DNA of 63,224 bases, the filler included, from Octopus bimaculoides (taxonomy: Eukaryota), in NCBI RefSeq assembly GCF_001194135.2. It is 5 parts of 5 records of this genome, joined end to end, with 100 filler letters (N's around TTAATTAATTAA, not from the genome) between each part and the next. Parts side by side here need not be neighbours in the genome. Positions count along the whole stretch, not along the records: positions 39,547 to 61,210 come from NC_068992.1; 4 more parts are not named here. The stretch is one strand, 5' to 3'. Both the position numbers and the translations under genes were made by a program. Below the pieces are notes generated by a model. That model did not search any database, was not told the origin of the DNA, and worked only from the letters and a program-made list of their open reading frames with translations. This document shows positions 40,480 through 61,311 of the stretch, one piece after another (position 1 is the first letter of the stretch; each line of letters opens with the position of its first letter).

Positions 40480-40543
40480 CTATGAAAGACATGTGTAACA
40501 CACGATTCATTTTCGTGTAAATTAATATTGAAGAATGTCTACT

Positions 40544-40959
40544 TGGTTAGCAGTTATATGTTACGATTCAGTATTGCTACTGTTTACATATCGCTCAGGT
40601 ATTTAATATAGCTTATTTCTCCTTTTTCGAGATCAGCGACGGTCTGTCATCTTGAAGAGCATATAGTATTTTGCGAGTGGATTGAGTTTTCAATCACAAG
40701 CTGGTGATTAACACACGCTGAGGACGGGTAACCACCCAGAAATTTGAGTTAGTGTGCATCATGTAGGGCTAGGGATTGTAGCGAATACTAATTGGACACA
40801 GAATGTGTGTCGTTAGCCAGCTGGAGGAGGTGTCTTTCTGGGGCTATAAACATCAGTAACACTGTCCCGTATAGGACGCCACACCTGGTTGGCAATTATA
40901 TGTTACGATTCCGTATTGCTACTGTTTACATCTCGCTCAGAGATTTAATACAGCTTATT
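40544..40959 (+). mobile_element. 342-bp unit with 74-bp terminal direct repeats and an internal hammerhead motif (Penelope pLTR or non-LTR retrozyme-like)
   Basis: 40544-40617 versus 40886-40959 show 7 mismatches in 74 bp. The hammerhead is at 40712-40756. Confidence 0.6.
40712..40756 (+). ncRNA. Hammerhead ribozyme motif, type I, degenerate
   Basis: Stem I cacac/gtgtg, CTGAGGA at 40718-40724, stem II gggt-aacc-accc, GAAA at 40739-40742, a short stem III and a GTT triplet. Two junction pairs are mismatched. Confidence 0.55.
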
Positions 40960-46474: not shown

Positions 46475-47520
46475 GCATGTGGACCATATAAAAGCTTTGA
46501 TTAAGAAAATTAAAGAGCACGGATTCACTTTGACACTTAGCGCAAAGTAAAATGCGAATTCTTTTCGCCGCAAATTAGGTACTTAGGGCAAATATTTGAT
46601 AAAAATGGCAGACGGCTTGACCCGTCGATGGCAGACGGAATAAAGACTATGCCTGCTCATACAACTATACCAAAGTTACAATCGTTTCTTGGGCTGGCAA
46701 ACTACTGCCAAATCTACATTCCTAACATGCACAATCTAAGGGCTTGGGCGGTTAAATGCCAAAACGAGTTTGAAGAAATAAAAACATTGTTATAGCAGAT
46801 TTGTCTCTAGGGCATTTCGATCCTGAAATGGACATTGTTGTAGTGTCTCATACTTCGGAGTATGGAATAGGAGTAGTTTTGCTACACAAGCAGATAGCGG
46901 CGGAGAAAAAATACAGCCAGAAAGAAAAAGAAGCCTTATACATTATCTTTGTTGTGAAAACAATTCACATGTTTCTACATGGTAGAAGCTTTCTGTTACA
47001 AACAGATCATCGACCATTGCTATCAATTTATGGGTCAAAGAATGGGTTACCTACCCATACAGCGGACCGACTACAACGTTGGAGTATAACATTACTAAAT
47101 TACAATTGCAAAATGCAATATATTCCATCGAAAAAACAGGACATGTGGACTGTCTATCGAGACTAATTCCCCAAAATACAGAACCACTAAAGGATAACCG
47201 CACTGCAGGCAAAATATGATATAAGAAGTATTATGGCTAATGTTATCCAAGAAGTGCCAGTGACAGCACACAATATAAGAATGAAATCTGCAGGCAATGA
47301 GTGTATTACAAAAATGAAAGAAACTTTAAAAAATAAGCGGAATCAAAACACAAATTCGAGTAGTTTCTCAACATGCGACGATATTCTGATGTATGCGCAA
47401 ATAGTGGTAGTGCCGACTGCATTACAAAAACATGTGTTGGAGCAAATTCCGCAGCGGACACCTGGAAATGTCGAGGAAGAAAACTCTCATGAGGAACACC
47501 TTGAGATAAGGCCCAAATGA
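46475..47520 (+). mobile_element. Ty3/gypsy LTR retrotransposon pol remnant (RT thumb, RNase H, start of integrase; frameshifts and deletions)
   Basis: Peptides IKEHGFTL..CEFFSPQIRYLGQIFD, KLQSFLGLANYCQIYIPNM, AEKKYSQKEKEAL..FLLQTDHRPLLSIYGSK..TADRLQRWSITLLNY, and VVPTALQKHVL. Confidence 0.95.
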
Positions 47521-49013: not shown

Positions 49014-50232
49014 GTACATATATAATACATATATATAGATATGTATATAGATATAGATATATTTATACATATGTGTGTGTATGTATGCATGTATGTATGT
49101 ATGTATGTATGTAACTGACTCATACATAGACACATATGTGTGTGTGTTTACGTGTGTGTGTATGTGTGTTACGATTGGTAGCCAAAATCTCATTTTGCTG
49201 AAGCAACCTTTCTCCAGCCTATATGCTGAATTAGGAAATGCAATGTACACTAAGTAAATTAACATAATATGTAAGCAATCGGTGAATAACATACCAGAAG
49301 ATATTTAGGAAGCTTTTTTTCCTTTTTTTGCTCCGGAATACTACTTAAAATCGCATGTGAGAACACATACATATATATCAGGAAGATCTCTCTGCCAAAA
49401 TATGAACGTGTGAGAATGCTTCTTGTTATTTTGTCCTTTCTACCGTTCCATATGTCGCTGTATTACTAGTGTGTGGATATGTTCCAGCGTTAAAAAAAAG
49501 GATGGCTATAAGGTTTCTACTCATCTAAAAGGTATACACTAAACGCTAGCTTAACATCAATCATACACTTAAATGCCACGTTAATGAAATATTTCATAAA
49601 ATGGCCGCCTCCATCGCATTACCTATCAAATCTATTAATGTCTCATAAGTATAAATTTTACTTGAAATATAGCATTTTTACATGGCCTATTCTTTGCCGC
49701 AAAGGAACTGAAATACAGAAGCCAATGATATTTTATACCTAGTAATATAACACTTCAGAAAACATTTGAAGCTAGAATGTTTCCAACAAGAAGCGTATGT
49801 TACTTAAGAACATAAAATTGGTTGAAATTAAATAATACAAAATAGAAACAAGAGTTACACTAATGATACAAAGAAATTAGAAAATGATTTGCTTGTAACT
49901 TTAATTAAATACCGTCGCTAAAACATATATATTATGTGATTAAAATCAAGTGACAGTAAAATGTAACGCATATGACATATTCATTATGCATTTTAGCAAT
50001 ATAATTAGGATTTATGTTCCGAAATTTCTTTAGGTGTTTATAATAACATTTCAGTGAAAGGAAACAGTAATAGGTGTCGATAAATCTAATAGCATATCTA
50101 CTCCGTGACGGATGTAAAAAAACACACACACACAGTGTACGTGAGTTTGTGTGCAGTCTATCTTTTCTGCAGCAGTTTGCCTCTTTCTCTCTTTCTCTCT
50201 CTCTCTCTCTCTATCTATATATATATATATAT

Positions 50233-50363
50233 ACTATGTATTATTCATTAGAAATGCAGAGACGCCTATAATAGGACATCTACTCGCTAGAAATAGCAGC
50301 ATCTTCTAGCGAGTAGATGTCCTATTATAGGCGTCTCTGCATTTCTAATGAATAATACATAGT
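50233..50363. repeat. Perfect inverted repeat, 60-bp arms, 11-nt loop
   Basis: 50233-50292 is the exact reverse complement of 50304-50363. Confidence 0.97.
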
Positions 50364-50499
50364 CTATTGACTGTTTTTACTCTCGCTAGGCCACTGGTGG
50401 TAAATAAAATTTCTAAAATTTTCTTTGCCACCCTATAATTTATTAATATATATATATATATATGTATATATGTGTTTTATATATATCTTTATATATATT

Positions 50500-50704: not shown

Positions 50705-51085
50705 TGTTGTTGGCACTCCGTCGCTTACGACGTCGAGGGTTTCAGTTGATCCGATCAACGGAACAGCCTGCTCGTGAAATTAAAGTGCAAGTGGCCGAGC
50801 ACTCCACAGACACGTGTACCCTTAACGTAGTTCTCAGGGATATTCAACGTGACACAATGTGACAAGACTGACCCTTTGAATTACAGGCACAACAGAAACA
50901 GGAAGTAAGAGTGAGAGAAAGTTGTGGTGAAAGAGTACAGCAGGGTTCGCACCATACCCTGCCTGAGCCTGGTGGAGCTGTAGGTGTTTTCGCTCAATAA
51001 ACACTCACAACGCCCGGTCTGGGAATCGAAACCGCGATCCTATGACCGCGAGTCCACTGCCCTAACTACTGGGCCATTGCGCTCC
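50705..51085 (-). mobile_element. Full-length SINE family B (tRNA-derived head, LINE-like stem-loop tail, (ACA)n end)
   Basis: Head ggagcgcaatggcccagtagttagggcag..gtttcgattccc; tail hairpin cgtcgtaagcgacg; flanking 11-bp direct repeat cacacataggt (50693-50703 and 51093-51103), a probable TSD. Confidence 0.95.
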
Positions 51086-51149
51086 ATTCCCGCACACATA
51101 GGTGTATACATATGTAAACGAATATCATCTTTTAGTTTCACACTACCAA

Positions 51150-51290: not shown

Positions 51291-54200
51291 ATTATATTGA
51301 GCCTATTACTGAAACTAACTTTATTCAATTCGGAGTAACGAAAGAGAATCAATTTCGACCTGATTTGTATATTACCGGCTACAAATGAACATCTGTAGCA
51401 CATATTGACCTGGGTTAGCTTATACATAGAATATATTTCTTGTGTTAAACATTCCTCCTGTTTTCTTTTGACTCGATCCAGTTAAATTAGTAATTATAAT
51501 ATTGTGATTCATATCGACTGTGTCGTTAGAAACTTTGAAAAAAATGTATATGCCCTACACGTGTTAATTACAATGTTTCTAGCAAAAGTATTTTTTTTAT
51601 GAGAATGCCAGAAAGGGTGTCTCCAAGAATGTATAGACATATTGAAGATTTTAAAAGTTACGCTCAGGTAACCCACAAACAATTTTGCTTAAGTTGAATA
51701 TTTATATTTCACTCTATCCCTATCTTGGTTTGACCTTTACTCCAAAGTAGAAAAAAACTAAGTCTCAACCATTTATGAAAAATGTGTCATGCGCTCCTCT
51801 TTTATTTAGAAGCCATTATATAAAAGTGTATTTACTTATTTAGTAATGCTAGACACTTCCATTATTGGTATTTGGCTGACCTGAGCTTCAATTAATATTA
51901 TTATGAAATCAATGTTTCTCTCAGCTGCATATTGAAGTAGATATAAAATGTAATACCCATAAAATATTGGAAAAAAATATGATCTATTATTTATTAATTT
52001 TGATAACAATAATCTAAATGAATAATATAAAATGAACAGCGTTTTTTCTGGCTTACAGAATTACAAAATAAATCGACCGACCTTCAAGAAGCTGTTTATT
52101 ATTCATAAATATCTGGAAGTAATCTTTCCGTTGGTATTTTCCACTAGACATGAGCTATGGTATTTAATCATAAAGTTATTAAATTGTCTGTTGACATCAG
52201 GTGACATCAGCTGACAATCACTAAATTGTTAAAGCTTATATTCTGATGAGATTTATTTTGCCTTTTATAGACATAGTAATAATTTTCTCCGTAGTAGAGG
52301 GAAACTCTAATATGTCATTGTAAAACATCTGCAGTGCTTAATTTTATCTTTCTTAATTATAAAAATATACAAGTAATAACTGGTATAAATCAATCAACTA
52401 TATAAATTTATATATTTTCTTCATTACTGAATATAAAATATACAAAAAAACTTTGTTCTTACGGCGAAATAATTCAGTGTATTGCTTGTTTATTTTCATA
52501 TAAATCACAAAGTCAACTTTGTGATTCAGCTTTCTCAGTTTGGTAAAATAAATATGAATAAAAAATAAAGACCTGTATTCAAACAAGAAATCCATCTCAA
52601 TGCTCACGAAAAAGACATGAGTTGTCCATTATCCCATTTCCTTCATCCAAAACACGTGGAGTAATTTTTATACTCAAAAGAAGCAACAATGTTATGTTCT
52701 TGTGAAGGATAGTGGGACTATTTTAACGATGGAATGGCAATTATTGCTAAATGCAAAAACTACTGATTTGTTTTAACATGCCATCCAGATAATATATATG
52801 ATAAATATCAAGAAATCAAGTAGAGGGCCAATGTTATCGAATGAAGATCTGAGCAGATGGGGTTTGAAATGCCAATACGATCAGAATTGCTCTTTATAGC
52901 ATTAAACTGTAGGTATAATATTACACATGCAATTAGGATAAAGCTAAGCTGTAGCTGACATGCGCACTAGCGAAATGTTTTTTTTTTTCTAATTTGTACA
53001 CATAGGGCCATTATTAGGCAGTAAAGGTGAGCCATCTCTGATACATAATGTCATTTTCCAATTTAGACGAAAGATAAAATATTGTTTATACCCAAGGTAC
53101 CCTGATTACAGTTAAAAGTGCTCCTACCGATAATTGCTTGCCATTATTACCAGGACCAACACACCAGTGAATCCAAATACGTAGACATCAGTGACATTAC
53201 AATACAATTAAAATAATTACATTCGTGATTATATTGATAAAGTTGTAAACCTGATGTATCGCTTTTGTTAATCTGGGACCATATTTTATGTATTGAACAT
53301 TTATATATTATTGAATTTGCTGTAATCAACAACAGGCCCTGTCTATCATATTATAATATATGTACATACTAATATTCTTCCTTCATGAGATTTTTATGAA
53401 GTGTTAAATGATTGTATAGTATATATTTGATTCATATAATTTAGTTTCTGTGTTCGAAATATTTCAAATAAATGTTTCTATGATGTATTTGTTGCATTGT
53501 TTTTAACATAATCTTCCCAAAATAGGAAAATAATGGCTGTAAACGAACGTAAATTAACTCTGCATCTAACAAAAGTTATGAGTTGCTTTCCTCATACGTA
53601 AGCTGTGCCTTTAGACTCTATTTGTACCTATTACTCTCTTGTTGCAGCAGTCCGCAAAAAGTCTCTACATGACGTCATGTACTAACCGAGAAAGTAAAAG
53701 TGTGCAGCCTTAACAGGGAGCCAAATTTCGTGTTAAATGATATGCATACCCTGGATGCTATGGCGTTCGAGAAGATTTTCTTTATCACAGATATTTTGTC
53801 ACAGAAAACTGTTAACACAGTATACATGCATACACACACACAATTGCATGCAAGCAAATAAGCTAGTTCTAAAATCTCCGTAAGTAATGAACGCAGTAGC
53901 TGTACTGGCAATATTTCTTGCCACTTCAACATCGCTGTTCTGTTCAAACGGAACAGCCATGCTAAAGTGGCGTCAGACACACACACGTACGTATGTATGT
54001 ATGTATGTATGTATGTATGCATGTATGTATGTATGTATGTATGTATGTATGTATGTATGTGTACGTGCGTGCGTGTATGTGCGTGCGTCCGTATCTAGAC
54101 ATATTGTGCGCACCGAACGTCATATTTTAAAACAAGTTGCAAAACCACATTTCTGTACAAATATTCATCAACTGCAACTGGACATCAGCATTCCTTTCAG

Positions 54201-54344
54201 TACAATTACTCCATATCCAGCAAAAGAACAATTAGATACACAGATAGATACTTCATCTGTGCGTTTGGATGCCCGTATGTGGATAATATTGGATTCAAAA
54301 TTTGCCACAATGATACCAATTTCCAATCAGTGGGTTACTCGATA

Positions 54345-54784
54345 GTATCGACCTCAGTGCTCAACTGGTACTTATTTTATTAACCCTCAAATGACAAAGG
54401 ACGAAATTTGGATTCACAACGTAAAAAGAGACGAAATGCCGATAAGTTCTTTGCGGCGTGTTAACTATTCTGCCAATTCGCTGCGTTCCGTGTCTATATT
54501 AAAGAAGTTTTAAATTTTAGAACATGGCCAGCAGTTTTGCAGGAGGGAGTGAGTCAATTCAATTCACCCGAGTGTTCAACTGGTACTTATTTTATTGCTC
54601 CCGAAAGTGAGAGAAAGTTGTGGTGAAAGTGTACAGCAGGGTTCGCCACCATCCTCTGCCGGAGCCTCGTGGAGCTTTAGGTGTTTTCTCTCAATAAACA
54701 CTCACAACGCCCGGTCTGGGAATCGAAACCGCGATCCTATGACCGCGAGTCCTCTGCCGTAACCACTGGGCCATTGCGCCTCCA
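54345..54784 (-). mobile_element. Two diverged family A fragments fused to the 5' half of a young family B SINE
   Basis: The family A core runs to ...attgctcccgaaag, then family B gtgagagaaagttgtggtg...ccactgggccattgcgcctcc (54606-54784). Confidence 0.85.
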
Positions 54785-55719
54785 CATATCTTTCTGTACA
54801 AACATAAATACATACATACACATATACATACATCTTAAGGACTAAGAAACTTTAACATAACATGAAGAACGTATTTTTGGTGCCAGTGAAACTCGAAATA
54901 TATAAAGGTATAACAAATAACGTATAAATATTAGATATGAAAAGCCTTTTGGATAGGAAAATTCGATGGATGCCTCTATATGACACGCACAGACACACAC
55001 ACACACACGCACACACACACACACACACACTTCCCAACATATGTATGGATGTATGTTCACTTATACATGAATTTATATCCATAACTGTAGGTTATAAACC
55101 ATTCCAAAGATTTTGTAACTTGGTTAATATCAATCATAAAAGTATTAAACAACAAATATTTTTCTATGTCGATTATTTTGAATGTTTCTTAATATTACAT
55201 GAAAAATTATTTAAGAAACCTGGATAACTAAAAAAAAATCGCTCCCAGATAAATTTCCCTGTCCGTGTGCAGATCATACTTTGTCTGAATACCCAAACAG
55301 GGCATTATCTTTCGAACAATTTGTTGTGAAAAAAAGAACAAAACCAAATTACTGCAATATGAAATTGCTTTTGAAACCGACCAGCAGTGTCACGAGATTT
55401 CCAAATGAATCTATCGAATTGAACGGGATTTCGTTTTGGATGCATTTCATCTAACTCCTATATTACGCATCTCGATCCCACTCAATTGTTTTATAGATAA
55501 ATAGGCCTGGGAATATTCCTTTACAAAACTCGGTATATGCATGTGAAATTTAACGCATTGTCGTGAATTTGCAACTGAGGTAATATATGTTTCACAAGGA
55601 AACTCAATAAAAGATAATTTCTCATAAAAGGATATATAAAAAGTGACCACATTATCAGCGAATAAATATGCGCGCATGCCCCCACACAGTCGCCCCCCCC
55701 CCACGCATGCTTATATACA

Positions 55720-57046
55720 CAAGGTGTCCACAAAGACTTTCGACAATTTCAATATGGTGTTACGCAAAACCTAGAAGAGGTGGCACCTAAACTTTTGTTG
55801 CAGGTTAATATGTTATTAGTAAAGATCTTTTAATGACATTAGTAGTTTTGTCAATGTTATGTTTTTATGTTTAGGACCGCAATTAATGCTGGTTTTACAT
55901 TTTAGACAATGAATACACCTCAAGAAATGACACAAAGTGTGCCTTTGTTTATTGAAATAAAGTCAGATATTCAAACGTAAAGAAATTACACATCTAAATA
56001 TGGAAAACAATCTCCGGCAAGTCAGACGATTCACAGCTAGCATAAGCAATGAATGGAAACAAAGAGGGTACTACATAAACCGAAAGGCCAAGAACATCTG
56101 AAGAAGATATTGAGTGTTTTCGTCAGCCATATCCACATCTGCATAACGCTAAATTCATCCGAACACTTTCCGTTCAGCCATAATTACTGAGATCACCATT
56201 TCAGGGTAAACATTCATATAGCGCTCCATAGGAATTTGAAGATATACGCATATAAATTTAGTTATTGCAACCAGTGAAGTTAAATAACAAACTGCAACAA
56301 AACGAATTTACTATTAAAATCCTGCAAAATTCAAAAATGGCGACTTCCTTAATCGTATTTACTTTAGGGATGAAACAAACTTCTATGTGTCTGGAAAACT
56401 TAACTTGCCTAATGCGAGAATTTGGGGATCGAAAAATCTTCACATTACTAGGGGAATCGAACGTGGCAGCTCAACGGTTTATGTGTGGTGCACGATTTTA
56501 TGCAACAAAGTTATTGGTGAATTTGTTTTTGAAAACACAATAACAGTTGATGTATTCTTTGATGTTCTAGAAGAACACGTTGTGTCACAGCTAGAATAAC
56601 TCCATCCATGTGTCATCTTTCAACAAAATTGAGCACCGTTCATTGAGGAATAAACGTTCACGGATTTTTAAATAAAAACCATTCAGATTGCAGGATAGGA
56701 GGAGTTGATCCAATTCCTTGACACCCCTTTACCAGATATAACATCCACTGATTTTTCTTGTGGGTTGTACAAAAGATATTGTGTACCCCACTAAAATAAA
56801 GGAGTTAGGTTACCAAAGAATAACTGCCGCTATTACGACTGTTGATGAAGGTAAGTTAAGGAAGAAATGGACGGAAATTGAATGAAGACATTTTCATGCA
56901 ACGAATGGGGTACATATAGAAATCTATTAACTATTTTATATCAACTTCACTATTTACTTCATATTGTGTAACATGTGAACAGTATCCAGTTTTCATTGTA
57001 ATTGTAATAGATTTTCTGTCTGCATAATTACGTTGTGGACGCCCTA
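55720..57046 (+). mobile_element. Near full-length decayed Tc1/mariner DNA transposon, about 1.33 kb
   Basis: TIR-like caaggtgtccacaa and ttgtggacgcccta with TA flanks. The pseudo-ORF from ATG 55909 (MNTPQE..IKSDIQT*RNY..KYGK) continues SGKLNLPNARIWGSKN..VWC..IG, VIFQQN*AP and a decayed WPPRSPD..DFFLWG, ending near 56929. Confidence 0.92.
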
Positions 57047-57573
57047 TATACCTGCTTGTTGTTCATACAACTGTCTTCGTCTTTTGTTTTTCTATAAATT
57101 CCAACTATATATTNNNNNNNNNNNNNNNNNNNNNNNNNNNNNNNNNNNNNNNNNNNNNNNNNNNNNNNNNNNNNNNNNNNNNNNNNNNNNNNNNNNNNNN
57201 NNNNNNNNNNNNNNNNNNNNNNNNNNNNNNNNNNNNNNNNNNNNNNNNNNNNNNNNNNNNNNNNNNNNNNNNNNNNNNNNNNNNNNNNNNNNNNNNNNNN
57301 NATATATATATAGATAGATAGATAGATAGATAGATGTATCAAAATATGTATCAACATCTGTGTATATACATACTTACCAACAAAAAACATCTCACGATTG
57401 TTTCATCTTACTGTGTGGTCAATACTATGTCCCCTGCTATTGCTGGCATCCTATATATGTATATACACATGTACATATATAGAGAGATACATAGATGATA
57501 CGCATAGGCACATATTTACGTACATTCCGAAAGAAAAGCACATGTATGGAGATACACTCACATACACACACCT

Positions 57574-57623
<50 letters not shown>

Positions 57624-57654
57624 GTATACACGATAAACATACGTTCCCTCATCA

Positions 57655-57795
57655 TAGCAGTTCGGCATAGGTTACCGATAGAATGAGTACCATGCTTAGC
57701 AAAATTAATTACTGGGGTCGATTCATTTGGTTGAATATCCTTGTAGACAGCGCCCTAGAGTGGTCGTAGTCTAATCACCGAAACATGTAAAAGAT
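57655..57795 (+). mobile_element. SINE family D fragment (diverged)
   Basis: gcagttcggc..accgatagaatgagtacc..ctggggtcgatt..gtctaatcaccgaaacatgtaaaaga, related to 61312-61470. Confidence 0.7.
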
Positions 57796-58878
57796 AAAAA
57801 GAAAGTAGAAGATATCGCGACAGACAGATAATTGTAGATATAAGTATACATATAGACACAGAGTAGAACATATAGACATTGATACAGACACATAATTGAA
57901 GAGACTTCGGTGTATGTATAATAAATTCATTAACAACTTATGATAACTAATGTACGAATGAAAGCAGCTGTATTTATAAAGCAATGTCACCGAAAGTAAA
58001 AACATCTATTGAATACAACTTTATTGTCTAGACGCAATATTAGTAGCTAACACATCGAAATATTCTCATTTACGTAAATATACTCCTAAACAGAGAACTA
58101 GATTATGCTAGACTTTATTTAATCAGAACTTATTTCTATATTGTTTTAATTTGATTTACAAAATTTCATTTGTTACATTTATCTTGCCATCATAGCTTTC
58201 TTTCATATAATTATCTCCACCCCAACGTTTCCCCGCACGATTTGTCTTATCTCTTTTTTCATTTCGTCTATCAGATATCGTTCAAGATTTCCACTGCAGG
58301 AATCCTAATTGTACGTAAATCTGTATAAATAAACCTTTTCACCCCTTTCTTTCTATACACCTGCGGACATTTCTAAACAGTTCTGTTTCTATTAAGTTTT
58401 TATTATAATAATTTCCTCTGTATATAATTTTTTACACTTCCAGTTTCATAAAAGAGACACACTTTCTTTTCTTTATCATATCTGTCTGTTTGTTACGTTT
58501 TTCTTCTCTTGTAAAGGAAACCAGATTTACCACATAATTTTTTTCCCAAACAATTTCTGTATTTTCCCTTGCTTCTCCTGTATGCTCTGCGTTTTCACTA
58601 TGCCCATAGTGAATAATTGTATTCTCTCTACGTTAATATCGAATATTATGACACGTTTATGGAATGTTCCTAAAGTTCATTCAGATATAATCAATAAGTA
58701 TATATCACATTGTTTAACACAATTTTTGTTCCTGGGTAGAAACTGTTATTTCTTAATTTAGGATATAATAATTGCCTACCCTTAGAGAGTATGAAAAATG
58801 GTGAATATTTCCTTCAAATTTACTCTCCTCAAACTTGTCGCCACTTGAGCAGCTAGACTTTTAAGCATACGATTCCTG

Positions 58879-58962
58879 TATTTATACTGCCATATATGTT
58901 GCCAGAAACTTCTAGAAATTCTTGAAAGTTCTTGAAACTTCTAGAAAGTTCTAGAATATTCT
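58879..58962 (-). promoter_or_regulatory. Heat-shock-element array plus TATA box
   Basis: Nine contiguous perfect alternating nTTCn/nGAAn pentamers (58918-58962) plus three more (58904-58917, 1-nt offset). TATAAATA on the minus strand (58886-58879) lies 17 nt downstream. Confidence 0.75.
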
Positions 58963-59264
58963 GCTTCAGCAACACAGCGCTGAATCTGTTTGAAATGTGA
59001 TGGAAAACGAGTCAGTTTCAAAACAAGCTCCGGTAACAAAAGTATAATTTGAAGGGAGTGATAGTCATTTCCTTTGATTTCCAGATAGAAGCAAATAAGA
59101 AATAACACTTACTGTCCAAAGAGACAAAAAAAATTGTTACAGACTTTTATGATATAGGTTGCGAATATTCGTAGTTACCTCGACAATCTTGAATATCTCC
59201 CCATCACAATTTCAGCCAATATGATAATGTGCGTATTCGAAAATATTTCTTTCTAATTTAGGCA

Positions 59265-59460
59265 CAATGCCATAGGTGTGAGGTAAGGTGTAAGTCAATT
59301 ACATCCAGTCCATCACTCAAATGTTACTTCTTTTATCAATCCTCAAATAGGGAAAGGCAATTTCGACCTCAGCGTAATTTACACTCAGAACGTAAAGAGC
59401 TGAAAGAGATGCTGCTGCACATTCTTCCAGTACAGTATTGATTCTGCCATCTCACCGCCT
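59265..59460 (-). mobile_element. SINE family A copy (diverged)
   Basis: gggaaaggcaatttcgacctcagcgtaatttacactcagaacgtaaag...ttctgccatctcaccgcc. Confidence 0.75.
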
Positions 59461-59754
59461 TATGCATATCAAATATTGAGATTGTATAATTGCTACGTAT
59501 TTTCTTTTAGATATGTTACTACAACATTATAAGAATATTGCATTAAAACCTCCGCATTTATGAACTTGACAACATTGACTTTTGTTAGATGTATGTATTG
59601 TATATGCTATATATATATATATATATATATATATNNNNNNNNNNNNNNNNNNNNNNNNNNNNNNNNNNNNNNNNNNNNNNNNNNNNNNNNNNNNNNNNNN
59701 NNNNNNNNNNNNNNNNNNNNNNNNNNNNNNNNNNNNATATATATCATTCGCCAT

Positions 59755-59950
59755 GATAAATCGCTGACCACTACATTTATATTTTTCTCTCCTTGTTTTT
59801 CTCCTTATTTCTTTCTGTGTCCCTTTCTGTTGAAGAGCGTAGCTCGAAACGTTAAAGACTTTCTCTATTACCGAGCGTTAAACTAATACATCCTTTTGTT
59901 GTTTACACCACTTGTCCTCGTCTGTTGTTGTTTTTTTCGTAAATCCCCCC
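59755..59950 (+). mobile_element. Penelope-like pLTR-derived repeat with a minimal hammerhead-like motif (59823-59857), flanked by (TA)n
   Basis: cttt-CTGTTGA-a-gagc gta gctc-GAAA-c gt t-aaag. The 3' part resembles 57048-57113. Confidence 0.55.
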
Positions 59951-59952
59951 CC

Positions 59953-59987
<35 letters not shown>

Positions 59988-59989
59988 AA

Positions 59990-60044
59990 TAGATAGATAG
60001 ATAGCTAGCTAGATAGATAGATGTATAGATAGATAGATAAATAG

Positions 60045-60127
<83 letters not shown>

Positions 60128-60128
60128 T
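59990..60128. repeat. (AGAT)n tetranucleotide microsatellite
   Basis: Direct. Confidence 0.97.
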
Positions 60129-60557
60129 ACTTAATAGTAGAATCAGAAGAGAACGTATAGCGCCTTGTCCCATGTCACAGCCTCTAGAATTGGGATGACG
60201 AGAGGAATTTGTCCTTTCACCTGCTCAAAACTGGGACTTCGCTCAAATGCCTGTTACGGTGTGTCCTCCGCTAACCACATATGTCTTAAACAGAGTGATA
60301 AACTGAATCAAAGAACAAAAATGCTCACTCTGACAGTTACCGTCATATTGACACTCACAAGGATTGGTCCACACAAAGATTTGTTATAAGATACTTACCC
60401 AAAATGCTGTGCTTTGGAATCGAACATGGAGCCATTTAGTGGTGAAGCTAAATTTCATAACCTATTCTAGTTTGTAAGTTGCAGTCTCCTATTGATAGAG
60501 AGCTCTGATCAAAGATATTACAATCTTGATCAATTGATCTTCATTATCATTCGTGTT

Positions 60558-61027
60558 ATCTATATATATAAAAATGAGAATGTGTGTCTGTCTGTCTATC
60601 TGTCTGTCTGTCTGTCTGTCTGTGTGAATCCCTAAAACTCGAGAACTACGCAACCAATTTCATTCAAACTTTACACATGCCTTACTTAGGGTTCCAGTTG
60701 TGTTTTAGTCAAAAAAAAATATTAACTTCTTTCAGAGTTCGAGCACACGGCAACATAATATCTCCTCCACTATTTAAGTATTACGTGTCAAAAGTGAAAC
60801 AAAAACACTCATGTCAAATACTTTCACTTTAAAAATGAAACTATTCCACTAACTGAAACAATCACATTTCGATACTGTAGTGACAGATACTTTCACACAG
60901 AGAGAAAGAGAGAGAGACAGAAATAGAGAGAGAGAGAGAGAGAGATGTATATGTATACATATACATGTATATGTACACCATTTCGATACTGTAATGACAG
61001 ATACTTTCAGTGAGAGAGAGAGAGAAG

Positions 61028-61079
<52 letters not shown>

Positions 61080-61205
61080 TGTATATGTATACATATAGAT
61101 GTACACGTATACATACATGTATATGTATACATATGTGTAGATGTATATATCTATATATATAGATGTACATGTAATATGTACACATATATACATATATACA
61201 TGCAT
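60558..61205 (+). mobile_element. Non-autonomous Helitron-like element, 5' part, with internal tandem unit (3' end lost in gap)
   Basis: A|TCTATATATATAAAA 5' terminus, (TCTG)n, aaccaatttcattcaaactt, and repeated catttcgatactgta.tgacagatactttca at about 60865 and 60980. Confidence 0.6.
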
Positions 61206-61311
61206 ACATANNNNNNNNNNNNNNNNNNNNNNNNNNNNNNNNNNNNNNNNNNNNTTAATTAATTAANNNNNNNNNNNNNNNNNNNNNNNNNNNNNNNNNN
61301 NNNNNNNNNNT

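What the first reader, a model, noticed from the sequence alone, without database searches (positions are those of the whole stretch)
58850..58965. Textbook heat-shock promoter (12 HSE pentamers plus TATA) with no hsp gene behind it
Seen: attct tgaaa gttct tgaaa cttct agaaa gttct agaat attct (9 perfect alternating pentamers) plus 3 more. On the minus strand TATAAATA follows 17 nt later, placing a start near 58855-58860. Established: HSF1 trimers bind inverted nGAAn arrays cooperatively, hsp70 promoters have this HSE-TATA layout, and Caenorhabditis Helitrons spread HSE arrays. Seen: the downstream 58040-58800 region is purine-rich with broken ORF-like stretches (e.g. IHYGHSENAEHTGEARENTEIVWEKNYVVNL) and no HSP motif. 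Inference: this is a stress-inducible promoter of a decayed mobile or viral element, or of a non-coding RNA, that could put intronic transcription under heat control.
Basis: partly seen in the sequence, partly recalled or inferred. Interest (0 to 1): 0.75.

Follow-up and report, generated by a model that had tools for sequence, protein, structure and literature searches.

The report
Orphan heat-shock promoter without a gene
A compact, near-perfect binding array for the heat-shock transcription factor sits next to a TATA box in repeat-rich animal DNA with no chaperone gene behind it; it is most likely a promoter carried or left behind by a small mobile element, which is a known phenomenon.

Summary
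At 58904-58962 there are 12 perfect nGAAn/nTTCn pentamers: 9 contiguous plus 3, separated by a one-base register slip. This is the only HSE cluster in the 21.6-kb piece (8 trimer hits against 0.18 expected). TATAAATA lies 17 nt away on the minus strand (58886-58879).

All 9 differences between units fall on the two positions HSF does not read (P about 9e-5). It is therefore not a drifting minisatellite.

No HSP70, HSP20, HSP90 or DnaJ domain lies on either strand of the piece. The only real Pfam hit is a decayed retroelement RNase H 12 kb away. Downstream ORFs are at most 33 aa and the stretches tested have no homologues. The downstream 0.75 kb is purine-rich and ends at AATAAA signals.

The promoter sits in the middle of a ~458-bp unit bounded by diverged ~60-nt inverted repeats (foldback z = -3.3).

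In metagenomes the same layout (at least 6 pentamers plus TATA) occurred at 34 loci. None had an hsp domain downstream; 9 were Tc1/mariner elements.

Best reading: an orphan, mobile-element-borne heat-shock promoter giving non-coding read-through transcripts. HSEs on Helitrons, LTRs and mariner are already known. Copy number, taxon and expression could not be tested.

The parts
58904..58962 (.). HSE array of 12 perfect nGAAn/nTTCn pentamers: 9 contiguous at 58918-58962 and 3 at 58904-58918, with a one-base register slip at 58918. This is room for about four HSF trimers.
   Evidence: GAA/TTC cores are 36/36 invariant. Position 1 is A in 10 of 12 units. Position 5 is free (A5 T3 G2 C2).
58879..58886 (-). 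TATA box (TATAAATA on the minus strand), 17 nt downstream of the proximal pentamer.
   Evidence: background frequency.
58846..58858 (-). Inferred transcription start zone, 28-40 nt after the first T of the TATA box. Candidate start bases are A 58854 and the TCA at 58848-58846.
   Evidence: Inference from the usual TATA-to-start spacing applied to the sequence. There are no expression data.
58095..58855 (-). Inferred non-coding transcribed region. It is A- and purine-rich, with ORFs of at most 33 aa. AATAAA signals lie at 58404-58399, 58119-58114 and 58025-58020. A candidate 5' splice donor AAGG|GTAGGC has its GT at 58779-58778.
   Evidence: No homologues were found for the 58435-58632(-) or 58396-58758(+) translations. 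There is no Pfam hit in any frame.
58699..58758 (.). Left arm of the diverged inverted repeat that brackets the promoter. It pairs with 59093-59156. A second, weaker block at 58796-58820 pairs with 59046-59070.
   Evidence: I5 26 nt at 81%; I9 25 nt at 72%. (60-nt local alignment). (banded score 22; 189 microsatellite-free controls have mean 10.2, maximum 19.5, none as high). (arms pair in both the MFE and the centroid DNA fold; z = -3.29).
59093..59156 (.). Right arm of the inverted repeat. The whole bracketed unit is 58699-59156 (about 458 bp). TA dinucleotides at both outer ends are compatible with a TA target duplication but are uninformative in this AT-rich context.
   Evidence: sequence read.
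58965..58984 (.). Short G+C hairpin (TTCAGC ... GCTGAA) abutting the distal end of the array. Its significance is unknown.

Best explanation
The array is a real, selection-shaped HSF binding site. It offers room for four trimers and is coupled to a TATA core promoter that fires leftwards on the minus strand from about 58854.

It is an orphan. It drives no chaperone gene, only a short, purine-rich, non-coding or read-through transcript of about 0.45-0.85 kb, running to one of three AATAAA signals.

Its most likely origin is a small non-autonomous mobile element. The promoter lies in the centre of a ~458-bp unit bounded by diverged ~60-nt inverted repeats, which is MITE- or foldback-like. This is the layout expected of an internally deleted DNA transposon whose transposase gene had a built-in heat-shock promoter.

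Shown here: the motif, its statistics, the pattern of constraint, the absence of coding sequence, the inverted-repeat flanks, and that such promoters ride on transposons elsewhere.

Inferred: HSF binding in vivo, the start site, the transcript, and the mobile origin of this particular copy.
For: - Motif: 8 trimer cores against 0.18 expected, all in this array. It is the only cluster in the piece, even allowing one mismatch.
- Constraint: 9 of 9 differences between units fall on positions 1 and 5, and none on the 36 core positions, P = 8.8e-5. Seven of the 9 are on position 5, P = 6e-5. This matches the known AGAAn preference of HSF.
- TATAAATA is at 17 nt and correctly oriented.
- No coding gene: six-frame Pfam scans of the whole piece give only RT_RNaseH at 46774-47163. 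Local ORFs are at most 33 aa on the sense strand. Neither of the two translated stretches that were searched has homologues, in 1.84 billion representatives or in the word-indexed protein search.
- Strand asymmetry: the cumulative purine skew turns at 58967 and 58002, so the purine-rich domain starts at the array and ends at the AATAAA signals.
- Inverted-repeat bracket.
- Comparators: 34 metagenome loci have at least 6 pentamers plus TATA. Eight of these are one mariner family, laid out as TA + 34-44-nt TIR + 7 pentamers + TATA + ATG of a 337-345-aa Mos1-type transposase. Homology between copies stops at the element ends, and the cores are conserved across copies with 77-98% identical transposases.
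- One further locus is Tc1-type. Four share only a ~200-bp HSE-bearing repeat. None has an HSP domain in up to 2.5 kb downstream.
- Literature: HSE clusters on Helitrons (PMC6927752), HSE-bearing LTRs that are heat-induced more than 250-fold (PMC12801592), and an HSE in Drosophila mariner (PMC9777735).
Against: - Only one copy could be examined. There is no second copy in the piece, and none in metagenome, viral or prokaryote contigs.
- The source genome is not in the protein collections, so mobility is unproven.
- The inverted repeat is weak, at about 70% identity. Without the symmetry constraint it is only marginally above background: 7 of 214 natural controls score as high.
- There is no transposase remnant and no homology to the metagenomic HSE-mariner family beyond the motif.
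- The purine-rich stretch lies outside the bracketed unit and is unexplained.
- Many metagenome contigs are short, so the finding that no hsp domain was found downstream rests on about 18 loci with at least 1 kb of downstream sequence.
Confidence: 0.5

Rival explanations
1. This is a host-gene promoter whose body is not recognisable here. The segment 58854-58780 would be a non-coding first exon with donor AAGG|GTAGGC. The rest of a heat-inducible gene would lie beyond a very long intron of more than 19 kb, or rightwards beyond the piece edge, or consist of exons without Pfam domains. That gene could be an hsp, a lineage-specific gene, or a host lncRNA of the hsr-omega type.
For: The HSE-to-TATA geometry is that of classical hsp promoters. 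A plausible splice donor lies about 75 nt after the inferred start. The array is only 2.2 kb from the right edge of the piece. The piece is a draft assembly with four N runs.
Against: No HSP70, HSP20, HSP90 or DnaJ domain, or any other host-gene domain, was found in 19.3 kb downstream or 2.2 kb upstream. Heat-shock genes are typically intronless or have short introns (established knowledge). The N runs are 266, 10, 188 and 102 nt, which look like estimated sizes too small to hide a gene (inference). None of the comparator loci with equally long arrays had an HSP domain within the downstream sequence scanned.
Confidence: 0.2
2. This is a solo LTR, or the 5' LTR remnant, of a heat-responsive LTR retrotransposon. 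The HSE array and TATA would be U3, and the AATAAA would lie in R. This is the pattern seen in ONSEN in plants and in Ty3/Mdg4 families in the flatworm Macrostomum.
For: HSE-bearing LTRs exist in animals and are strongly heat-induced (PMC12801592). An AATAAA follows the TATA box. A decayed Ty3-type pol fragment is present in the piece, so such elements live in this genome.
Against: No convincing TG...CA termini with a target duplication were found: 10 candidates, about the chance number, with terminal inverted repeats of at most 3 nt. There is no second LTR, no PBS followed by gag-pol, and no internal domains nearby. The pol fragment is 12 kb away on the other strand. TGG at 58844-58842 lies only about 40 nt after the TATA box, too close to leave room for R-U5 of normal size.
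Confidence: 0.1
3. This is a relic of a divergent (bidirectional) heat-shock gene pair made by inverted duplication. The symmetric flanks would be the two diverged 5' leaders, and the genes themselves have since been lost or rearranged away.
For: The flanks are inverted repeats centred on the array. One block lies at almost identical distances from the two array ends (82 and 81 nt).
Against: There is no TATA box on the plus-strand side at a comparable distance. No coding remnant exists on either side. The global flank alignment is only 65% identical, with many gaps.
Confidence: 0.07
4. This is a chance HSE look-alike: a 10-bp palindromic minisatellite produced by slippage in a genome overloaded with simple repeats, sitting next to a chance TATAAA. 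It has no function.
For: The piece has 68 TRF rows in 21.6 kb. TATAAA is common, with about 0.075 chance of one correctly placed. A multi-gigabase genome could hold some GAAnnTTC-type period-10 arrays by chance (inference).
Against: Unit-to-unit differences avoid all 36 core positions (P = 8.8e-5) and reproduce the HSF preference: A at position 1, anything at position 5. The full 8-mer TATAAATA at 17 nt has a chance of about 0.014.
Confidence: 0.08

Closest known systems
Classical HSF-dependent hsp promoter (Drosophila hsp70 type)
   Same: Inverted nGAAn units in contiguous register. The proximal HSE lies 15-20 nt upstream of a TATA box. The downstream leader is A-rich.
   Different: Here 12 units are packed into one 59-nt array instead of several separate 3-5-unit HSEs. 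No chaperone ORF follows.
Helitron-borne HSE clusters of Caenorhabditis (Garrigues et al. 2019, PMC6927752)
   Same: Dense tandem HSEs sit outside hsp genes, where they can confer heat inducibility on neighbouring transcription. That paper states that high-density HSE clusters are a signature of the mobile element.
   Different: No Rep/helicase domain and no definable Helitron termini are present here. The flanks are inverted repeats, which Helitrons lack. The source appears to be a different, unidentified animal lineage.
HSE-bearing LTR retrotransposons (ONSEN in Arabidopsis; Ty3/Mdg4 families in Macrostomum lignano, PMC12801592)
   Same: Canonical HSEs lie upstream of an element-borne TATA and start site, giving heat-driven transcription of a mobile element.
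   Different: Those have 1-4 HSEs in an LTR with gag-pol behind it. Here no LTR ends, partner LTR or internal genes were found.
mariner/Tc1 transposons with an internal HSE-TATA promoter (the metagenome family found here, L008/L010/L012/L013/L017/L022/L028/L036; an HSE in Drosophila mariner is mentioned in PMC9777735)
   Same: A contiguous array of at least 6-7 pentamers is followed after 14-17 nt by TATA, all inside inverted-repeat ends.
   Different: Those carry an intact 337-345-aa transposase starting about 40 nt after the TATA box, and the array starts 3 nt after the TIR. The window unit has no transposase remnant, has 130 nt between the right inverted-repeat arm and the array, and shares no homology beyond the motif.
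Heat-inducible non-coding loci (Drosophila hsr-omega)
   Same: An HSE plus TATA promoter in front of a transcript without a meaningful ORF.
   Different: hsr-omega is a conserved single-copy host locus with long tandem-repeat transcripts. Nothing comparable can be shown here.

Membership tests
HSF-dependent heat-shock promoter | At least three contiguous alternating nGAAn units | tested here: met
   12 units: 9 contiguous plus 3
HSF-dependent heat-shock promoter | Core promoter (TATA) a short distance downstream of the proximal HSE, in a defined orientation | tested here: met
   TATAAATA at 58886-58879 (minus strand), 17 nt from the array; chance 0.014-0.075
HSF-dependent heat-shock promoter | Chaperone or other stress gene downstream | tested here: not met
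   No HSP70/HSP20/HSP90/DnaJ or other host domain in any frame of 39547-61210
HSF-dependent heat-shock promoter | Heat-induced HSF occupancy and transcription | not testable with these tools
   No expression or binding data for the unknown source organism
Helitron-borne HSE cluster | Helitron termini (5' TC, 3' hairpin + CTRR) or Rep/helicase gene | tested here: inconclusive
   No Rep/helicase domain in the piece. A short hairpin at 58965-58984 is not followed by a definable end. Termini cannot be set from one copy.
Helitron-borne HSE cluster | Many dispersed copies in the genome | not testable with these tools
   The source genome is not in any searchable collection
Tc1/mariner element or MITE with internal heat-shock promoter | Transposase (HTH_48 / Transposase_1 / DDE_3) or its remnant | tested here: not met
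   No Pfam hit. tblastn with the metagenomic HSE-mariner transposases gives nothing better than E = 0.65.
Tc1/mariner element or MITE with internal heat-shock promoter | Terminal inverted repeats flanked by a TA duplication | tested here: inconclusive
   Arms 58699-58758 and 59093-59156 are about 70% identical. The result is significant only with the symmetry constraint, and the DNA fold gives z = -3.29. TA at both ends is uninformative in AT-rich DNA.
HSE-bearing LTR / solo LTR | TG...CA termini with a 4-6-bp target duplication; partner LTR or gag-pol | tested here: inconclusive
   10 candidate TG...CA/TSD pairs, about the chance number, none with terminal inverted repeats above 3 nt. No partner repeat.
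Neutral minisatellite | Differences between units spread evenly over the unit | tested here: not met
   9 of 9 differences are on the 24 n positions and 0 on the 36 core positions, P = 8.8e-5
Heat-inducible lncRNA locus | No meaningful ORF in the transcribed region | tested here: met
   The first ATGs give ORFs of 1-26 aa, and the longest sense ORF is 33 aa. No homologues.

The most novel reading that the evidence does not exclude
The 458-bp inverted-repeat-bounded unit is one copy of a family of non-autonomous DNA transposons that carry a four-trimer HSF array plus TATA. The family would scatter ready-made heat-shock promoters through this animal's genome. That would be a counterpart of the Caenorhabditis Helitron story, but in a different transposon class and a different animal lineage, producing heat-inducible intronic, antisense or read-through transcripts.
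Probability: 0.2. Interest if true: 0.65.

Novelty: new member of a known kind. Interest (0 to 1): 0.4.

Why it matters
If the unit proves to be multi-copy, it would show that transposons other than Helitrons and LTR elements distribute complete heat-shock promoters in animal genomes. Here the promoter includes a TATA box as well as the binding sites. Each copy would be a candidate switch that places neighbouring or host-intron transcription under heat control.

If it is single-copy, it is an orphan promoter or an unannotated heat-inducible non-coding RNA. That would be a useful annotation but not surprising.

The comparator scan adds a general point. In environmental eukaryote DNA, very long perfect HSE arrays next to a TATA box mark mobile elements, especially one mariner family, more often than chaperone genes.

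Tried and rejected
1. An hsp gene nearby. Whole-frame and stop-free-segment Pfam scans of both strands of 39547-61210 found none.
2. The quoted ORF-like stretch as a decayed protein. The 66-aa stop-free segment 58435-58632(-) has one hit in 1.84 billion representatives. That hit is a repetitive junk protein with 29-33% identity over 31 aa. The antisense 121-aa stretch has none. Rejected as coding.
3. A fragment that looked mariner-like by eye at 56318-56596(+). It has no Pfam hit, no homologues and no tblastn match to real mariner transposases. Rejected.
4. A second TATAAATACAG at 57978 as a sign of a 908-nt duplication or paired LTRs. The local alignment is no better than shuffles, with 63 of 300 as good. 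Chance.
5. A solo LTR. Candidate termini occur at the chance number.
6. A viral or Polinton origin. There are no viral domains, the specific 22-mer is absent from viral contigs, and the generic layout is absent too.
7. Structured RNA. Rfam gives only sub-threshold microsatellite-derived miRNA look-alikes, and ARAGORN finds no tRNA.
8. Finding further copies or the source organism. The following all came back empty or uninformative, so the taxon is not established:
   - exact ORF look-ups;
   - specific DNA words in metagenome, viral and prokaryote contigs;
   - the nearest RNase H relatives, which are at most 67% identical and sit on unnamed Logan/ENA contigs.
9. The bacterial promoter/terminator scan is irrelevant here.

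Full report
**What is there**

The piece (39547-61210) is AT-rich animal-type DNA of about 33% G+C. It is crowded with microsatellites, with 68 TRF rows, and has four N runs of 266, 10, 188 and 102 nt.

At 58904-58962 the plus strand reads AGAAA CTTCT AGAA[A]TTCT TGAAA GTTCT TGAAA CTTCT AGAAA GTTCT AGAAT ATTCT. That is nine contiguous alternating nGAAn/nTTCn pentamers (58918-58962) and three more (58904-58918). The two blocks share one A, so there is a one-base register slip between them.

The trimeric HSE core TTCnnGAAnnTTC occurs eight times in the window, all here; shuffles give 0.18. Allowing one mismatch, the piece has no other cluster. The only addition nearby is a two-unit remnant at 58657-58674.

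On the minus strand TATAAATA occupies 58886-58879, 17 nt after the last pentamer. Given the background frequency of TATA words in the piece, a correctly oriented box 10-35 nt from either end is expected with a probability of about 0.075 (TATAAA) or 0.014 (TATAAATA).

**Is the array constrained or a drifting minisatellite?**

No homologous copies could be obtained, so I used the array's own units. Written as nGAAn, the twelve units are invariant at positions 2-4 (36 of 36). They have A at position 1 in 10 of 12 and are free at position 5 (A5, T3, G2, C2).

All nine departures from the per-position majority fall on the 24 n positions, P = 8.8e-5. Seven of the nine fall on position 5, P = 6e-5.

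This reproduces the known HSF preference (AGAAn; established knowledge). It is not what replication slippage followed by neutral decay would give.

**What lies behind it**

Pfam scans covered the whole piece: whole-frame scans (stops marked X) of 52001-58900(-), 55501-61210(+) and 58901-61210(-), and scans of every non-low-complexity stop-free segment of at least 30 aa in the rest, on both strands. They returned one real hit, RT_RNaseH at 46774-47163(+), E = 1e-15. There is no HSP70, HSP20, HSP90, DnaJ or transposase domain, and no viral domain.

From the inferred start (about 58854, 32 nt after the first T of the TATA box) the first ATGs open ORFs of 1, 7 and 26 codons. The longest sense ORF is 33 aa.

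The longest antisense stretch has none either.

The minus strand is 62-75% purine from 58680 to 58140, and A is 42% over 58095-58855. The cumulative purine skew turns at 58967 and 58002, so the asymmetric domain begins at the array and ends where AATAAA signals lie (58404, 58119, 58025).

A possible splice donor, AAGG|GTAGGC, has its GT at 58779-58778. The N runs have irregular small sizes, which suggests estimated gaps too short to hide a gene (inference).

**The flanks**

The sequences on the two sides of the array are diverged inverted copies of each other:
- 58733-58758 pairs with 59093-59118 (26 nt, 81%).
- 58796-58820 pairs with 59046-59070 (25 nt, 72%).
- The first pair extends to 58699-58758 against 59093-59156.

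Without a positional constraint this is only marginal: 7 of 214 natural controls and 8 of 500 shuffles score as well. When the two arms are required to lie at similar distances from the centre (band of 20 nt either way), the score of 22 exceeds all 189 microsatellite-free control centres in the piece (mean 10.2, sd 2.6, maximum 19.5).

Folded as single-stranded DNA, 58690-59165 gives -50.3 kcal/mol against -38.65 +/- 3.54 for shuffles (z = -3.29, 0 of 100 as good). The outer arms pair in both the MFE and the centroid structure.

The promoter therefore sits in the middle of a ~458-bp foldback- or MITE-like unit. The arms are old or imperfect (about 70% identity), and the TA dinucleotides at the ends are not informative in this sequence context. 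The purine-rich stretch lies just outside the left arm.

**What the same layout marks elsewhere**

I scanned the metagenome collection for AGAAnnTTCnnGAAnnTTCnnGAAnnTTC followed after 5-35 nt by TATAAA. By my rough estimate about 0.03 matches are expected by chance. Thirty-four loci matched, and none was found in viral contigs.

- Eight loci (L008, L010, L012, L013, L017, L022, L028, L036) are one mariner family. Its layout is TA, a 34-44-nt terminal inverted repeat, seven pentamers, 14 nt, TATATAAA, about 40 nt, then the ATG of a 337-345-aa Mos1-type transposase (HTH_48 plus Transposase_1, E down to 1e-28).
- In that family, homology between loci stops exactly at the element ends. The transposases are 77-98% identical, and the GAA/TTC cores are kept in all eight.
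- L032 has a Tc1-type ORF 77 nt after the TATA box.
- Four loci (L005, L009, L015, L020) share only a 200-300-bp repeat that contains the array and the TATA box.
- Among all stop-free segments of at least 45 aa in up to 2.5 kb downstream of the 34 loci, none hit an HSP family.

Caveats: only about 18 loci have at least 1 kb of downstream sequence. Multi-copy elements are over-sampled in metagenomes. Some bona fide hsp genes, such as plant small hsp genes, do have long arrays (from my own knowledge).

The window unit has no homology to these elements beyond the motif.

**Literature**

- Dense HSE clusters in Caenorhabditis reside in Helitrons and confer heat inducibility on neighbours (PMC6927752).
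- Ty3/Mdg4 LTR families of Macrostomum lignano independently acquired canonical HSEs and are induced more than 250-fold by heat. ONSEN does the same in plants (PMC12801592).
- The Drosophila mariner element is said to contain an HSE (PMC9777735).

Element-borne heat-shock promoters are thus an established kind.

**Most likely mechanism**

On heat shock, HSF trimers would bind cooperatively to the array, which has room for three adjacent trimers plus one next to the TATA box. They would recruit the transcription machinery to the TATA box 17 nt away. Transcription would start near 58854 on the minus strand, run through the left inverted-repeat arm into the purine-rich flank, and end at one of the AATAAA signals. 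No protein would be made.

Binding, start site and transcript are all inferred. The sequence features, their statistics and the absence of coding sequence are shown.

I put 0.5 on an element-borne or element-derived orphan promoter, with the inverted-repeat-bounded DNA element as the favoured class. The rivals:
- 0.2: a host-gene or host-lncRNA promoter whose body is outside the piece or unrecognisable.
- 0.1: a solo LTR. Termini were tested and candidates occur at the chance number.
- 0.07: a relic of a divergent hsp gene pair.
- 0.08: a chance array.

**Comparison and verdict**

It works like a classical hsp promoter, but it fails the membership feature of having a stress gene behind it. It resembles Helitron, LTR and mariner HSE carriers in function, but it cannot be filed in any of those families. 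Transposase, Rep/helicase and LTR features are either absent or undecidable from one copy.

Novelty: a new member of a known kind. Interest is moderate at 0.4. The motif is striking and clearly non-random. The phenomenon is known, however, and the decisive facts (copy number, synteny, heat-induced transcription) lie outside what these tools can reach, because the source genome is not in any searchable collection.

Noticed in passing
Loci L008, L010, L012, L013, L017, L022, L028, L036 (e.g. L012:688-1933): A family of about 1.25-kb mariner elements from environmental metagenomes carries a built-in heat-shock promoter. Seven contiguous HSE pentamers start 3 nt after the 5' terminal inverted repeat. 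TATATAAA follows 14 nt later, and the ATG of an intact 337-345-aa Mos1-type transposase about 40 nt after that. The HSE cores are conserved across copies whose transposases are 77-98% identical, and the flanks differ between loci. The held literature mentions an HSE in Drosophila mariner only in passing (PMC9777735).
   Followed up: partly
Loci L005, L009, L015, L020 (e.g. L009:1600-2100, minus strand): A 200-300-bp repeated unit containing an HSE array, TATAAA and a conserved leader, ending in a microsatellite. It occurs in different flanking contexts within the same assemblies and has no recognisable ORF. It is a second example of a small repeat that carries a complete heat-shock promoter.
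   Followed up: partly
window 46550-47494 (+): A decayed Ty3-type retroelement pol fragment, consisting of the end of RT, RNase H and the first ~35 residues of integrase. It is truncated at both ends, with 2 in-frame stops and at least 2 frame changes. The nearest relatives are at most 67% identical.
   Followed up: partly
window 50910-51086 and 54606-54784: Two copies (93-98% identical) of a ~175-nt G+C-rich SINE-like repeat. They account for the two G+C peaks in the composition profile. ARAGORN calls no tRNA in them. From memory it resembles tRNA-derived SINEs of cephalopods; this is an untested lead, and the taxon of the piece remains unknown.
   Followed up: partly
window 50229-50367: A near-perfect palindrome with 64-nt arms (98% complementary) separated by 11 nt, lying next to (CT)n/(TA)n repeats. 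It may be a hairpin-forming MITE or an assembly artefact.
   Followed up: no
window 40541-40617 and 40883-40959: A 77-nt direct repeat at 90% identity, 342 nt apart.
   Followed up: no
window 58657-58674: An isolated two-unit HSE remnant (GGAATGTTCC) about 190 nt downstream of the inferred start site, on the edge of the purine-rich stretch.
   Followed up: no
window 58140-58680 (minus strand): A 540-nt stretch with 62-75% purine on one strand. It has no tandem structure, no ORF and no homologue, and lies immediately outside the left inverted-repeat arm. Its origin is unexplained.
   Followed up: partly
window 60865-61112: A 114-nt unit repeated in tandem (72-78% identity), embedded in (GA)n and (TATG)n-type repeats at the right edge of the piece.
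   Followed up: no
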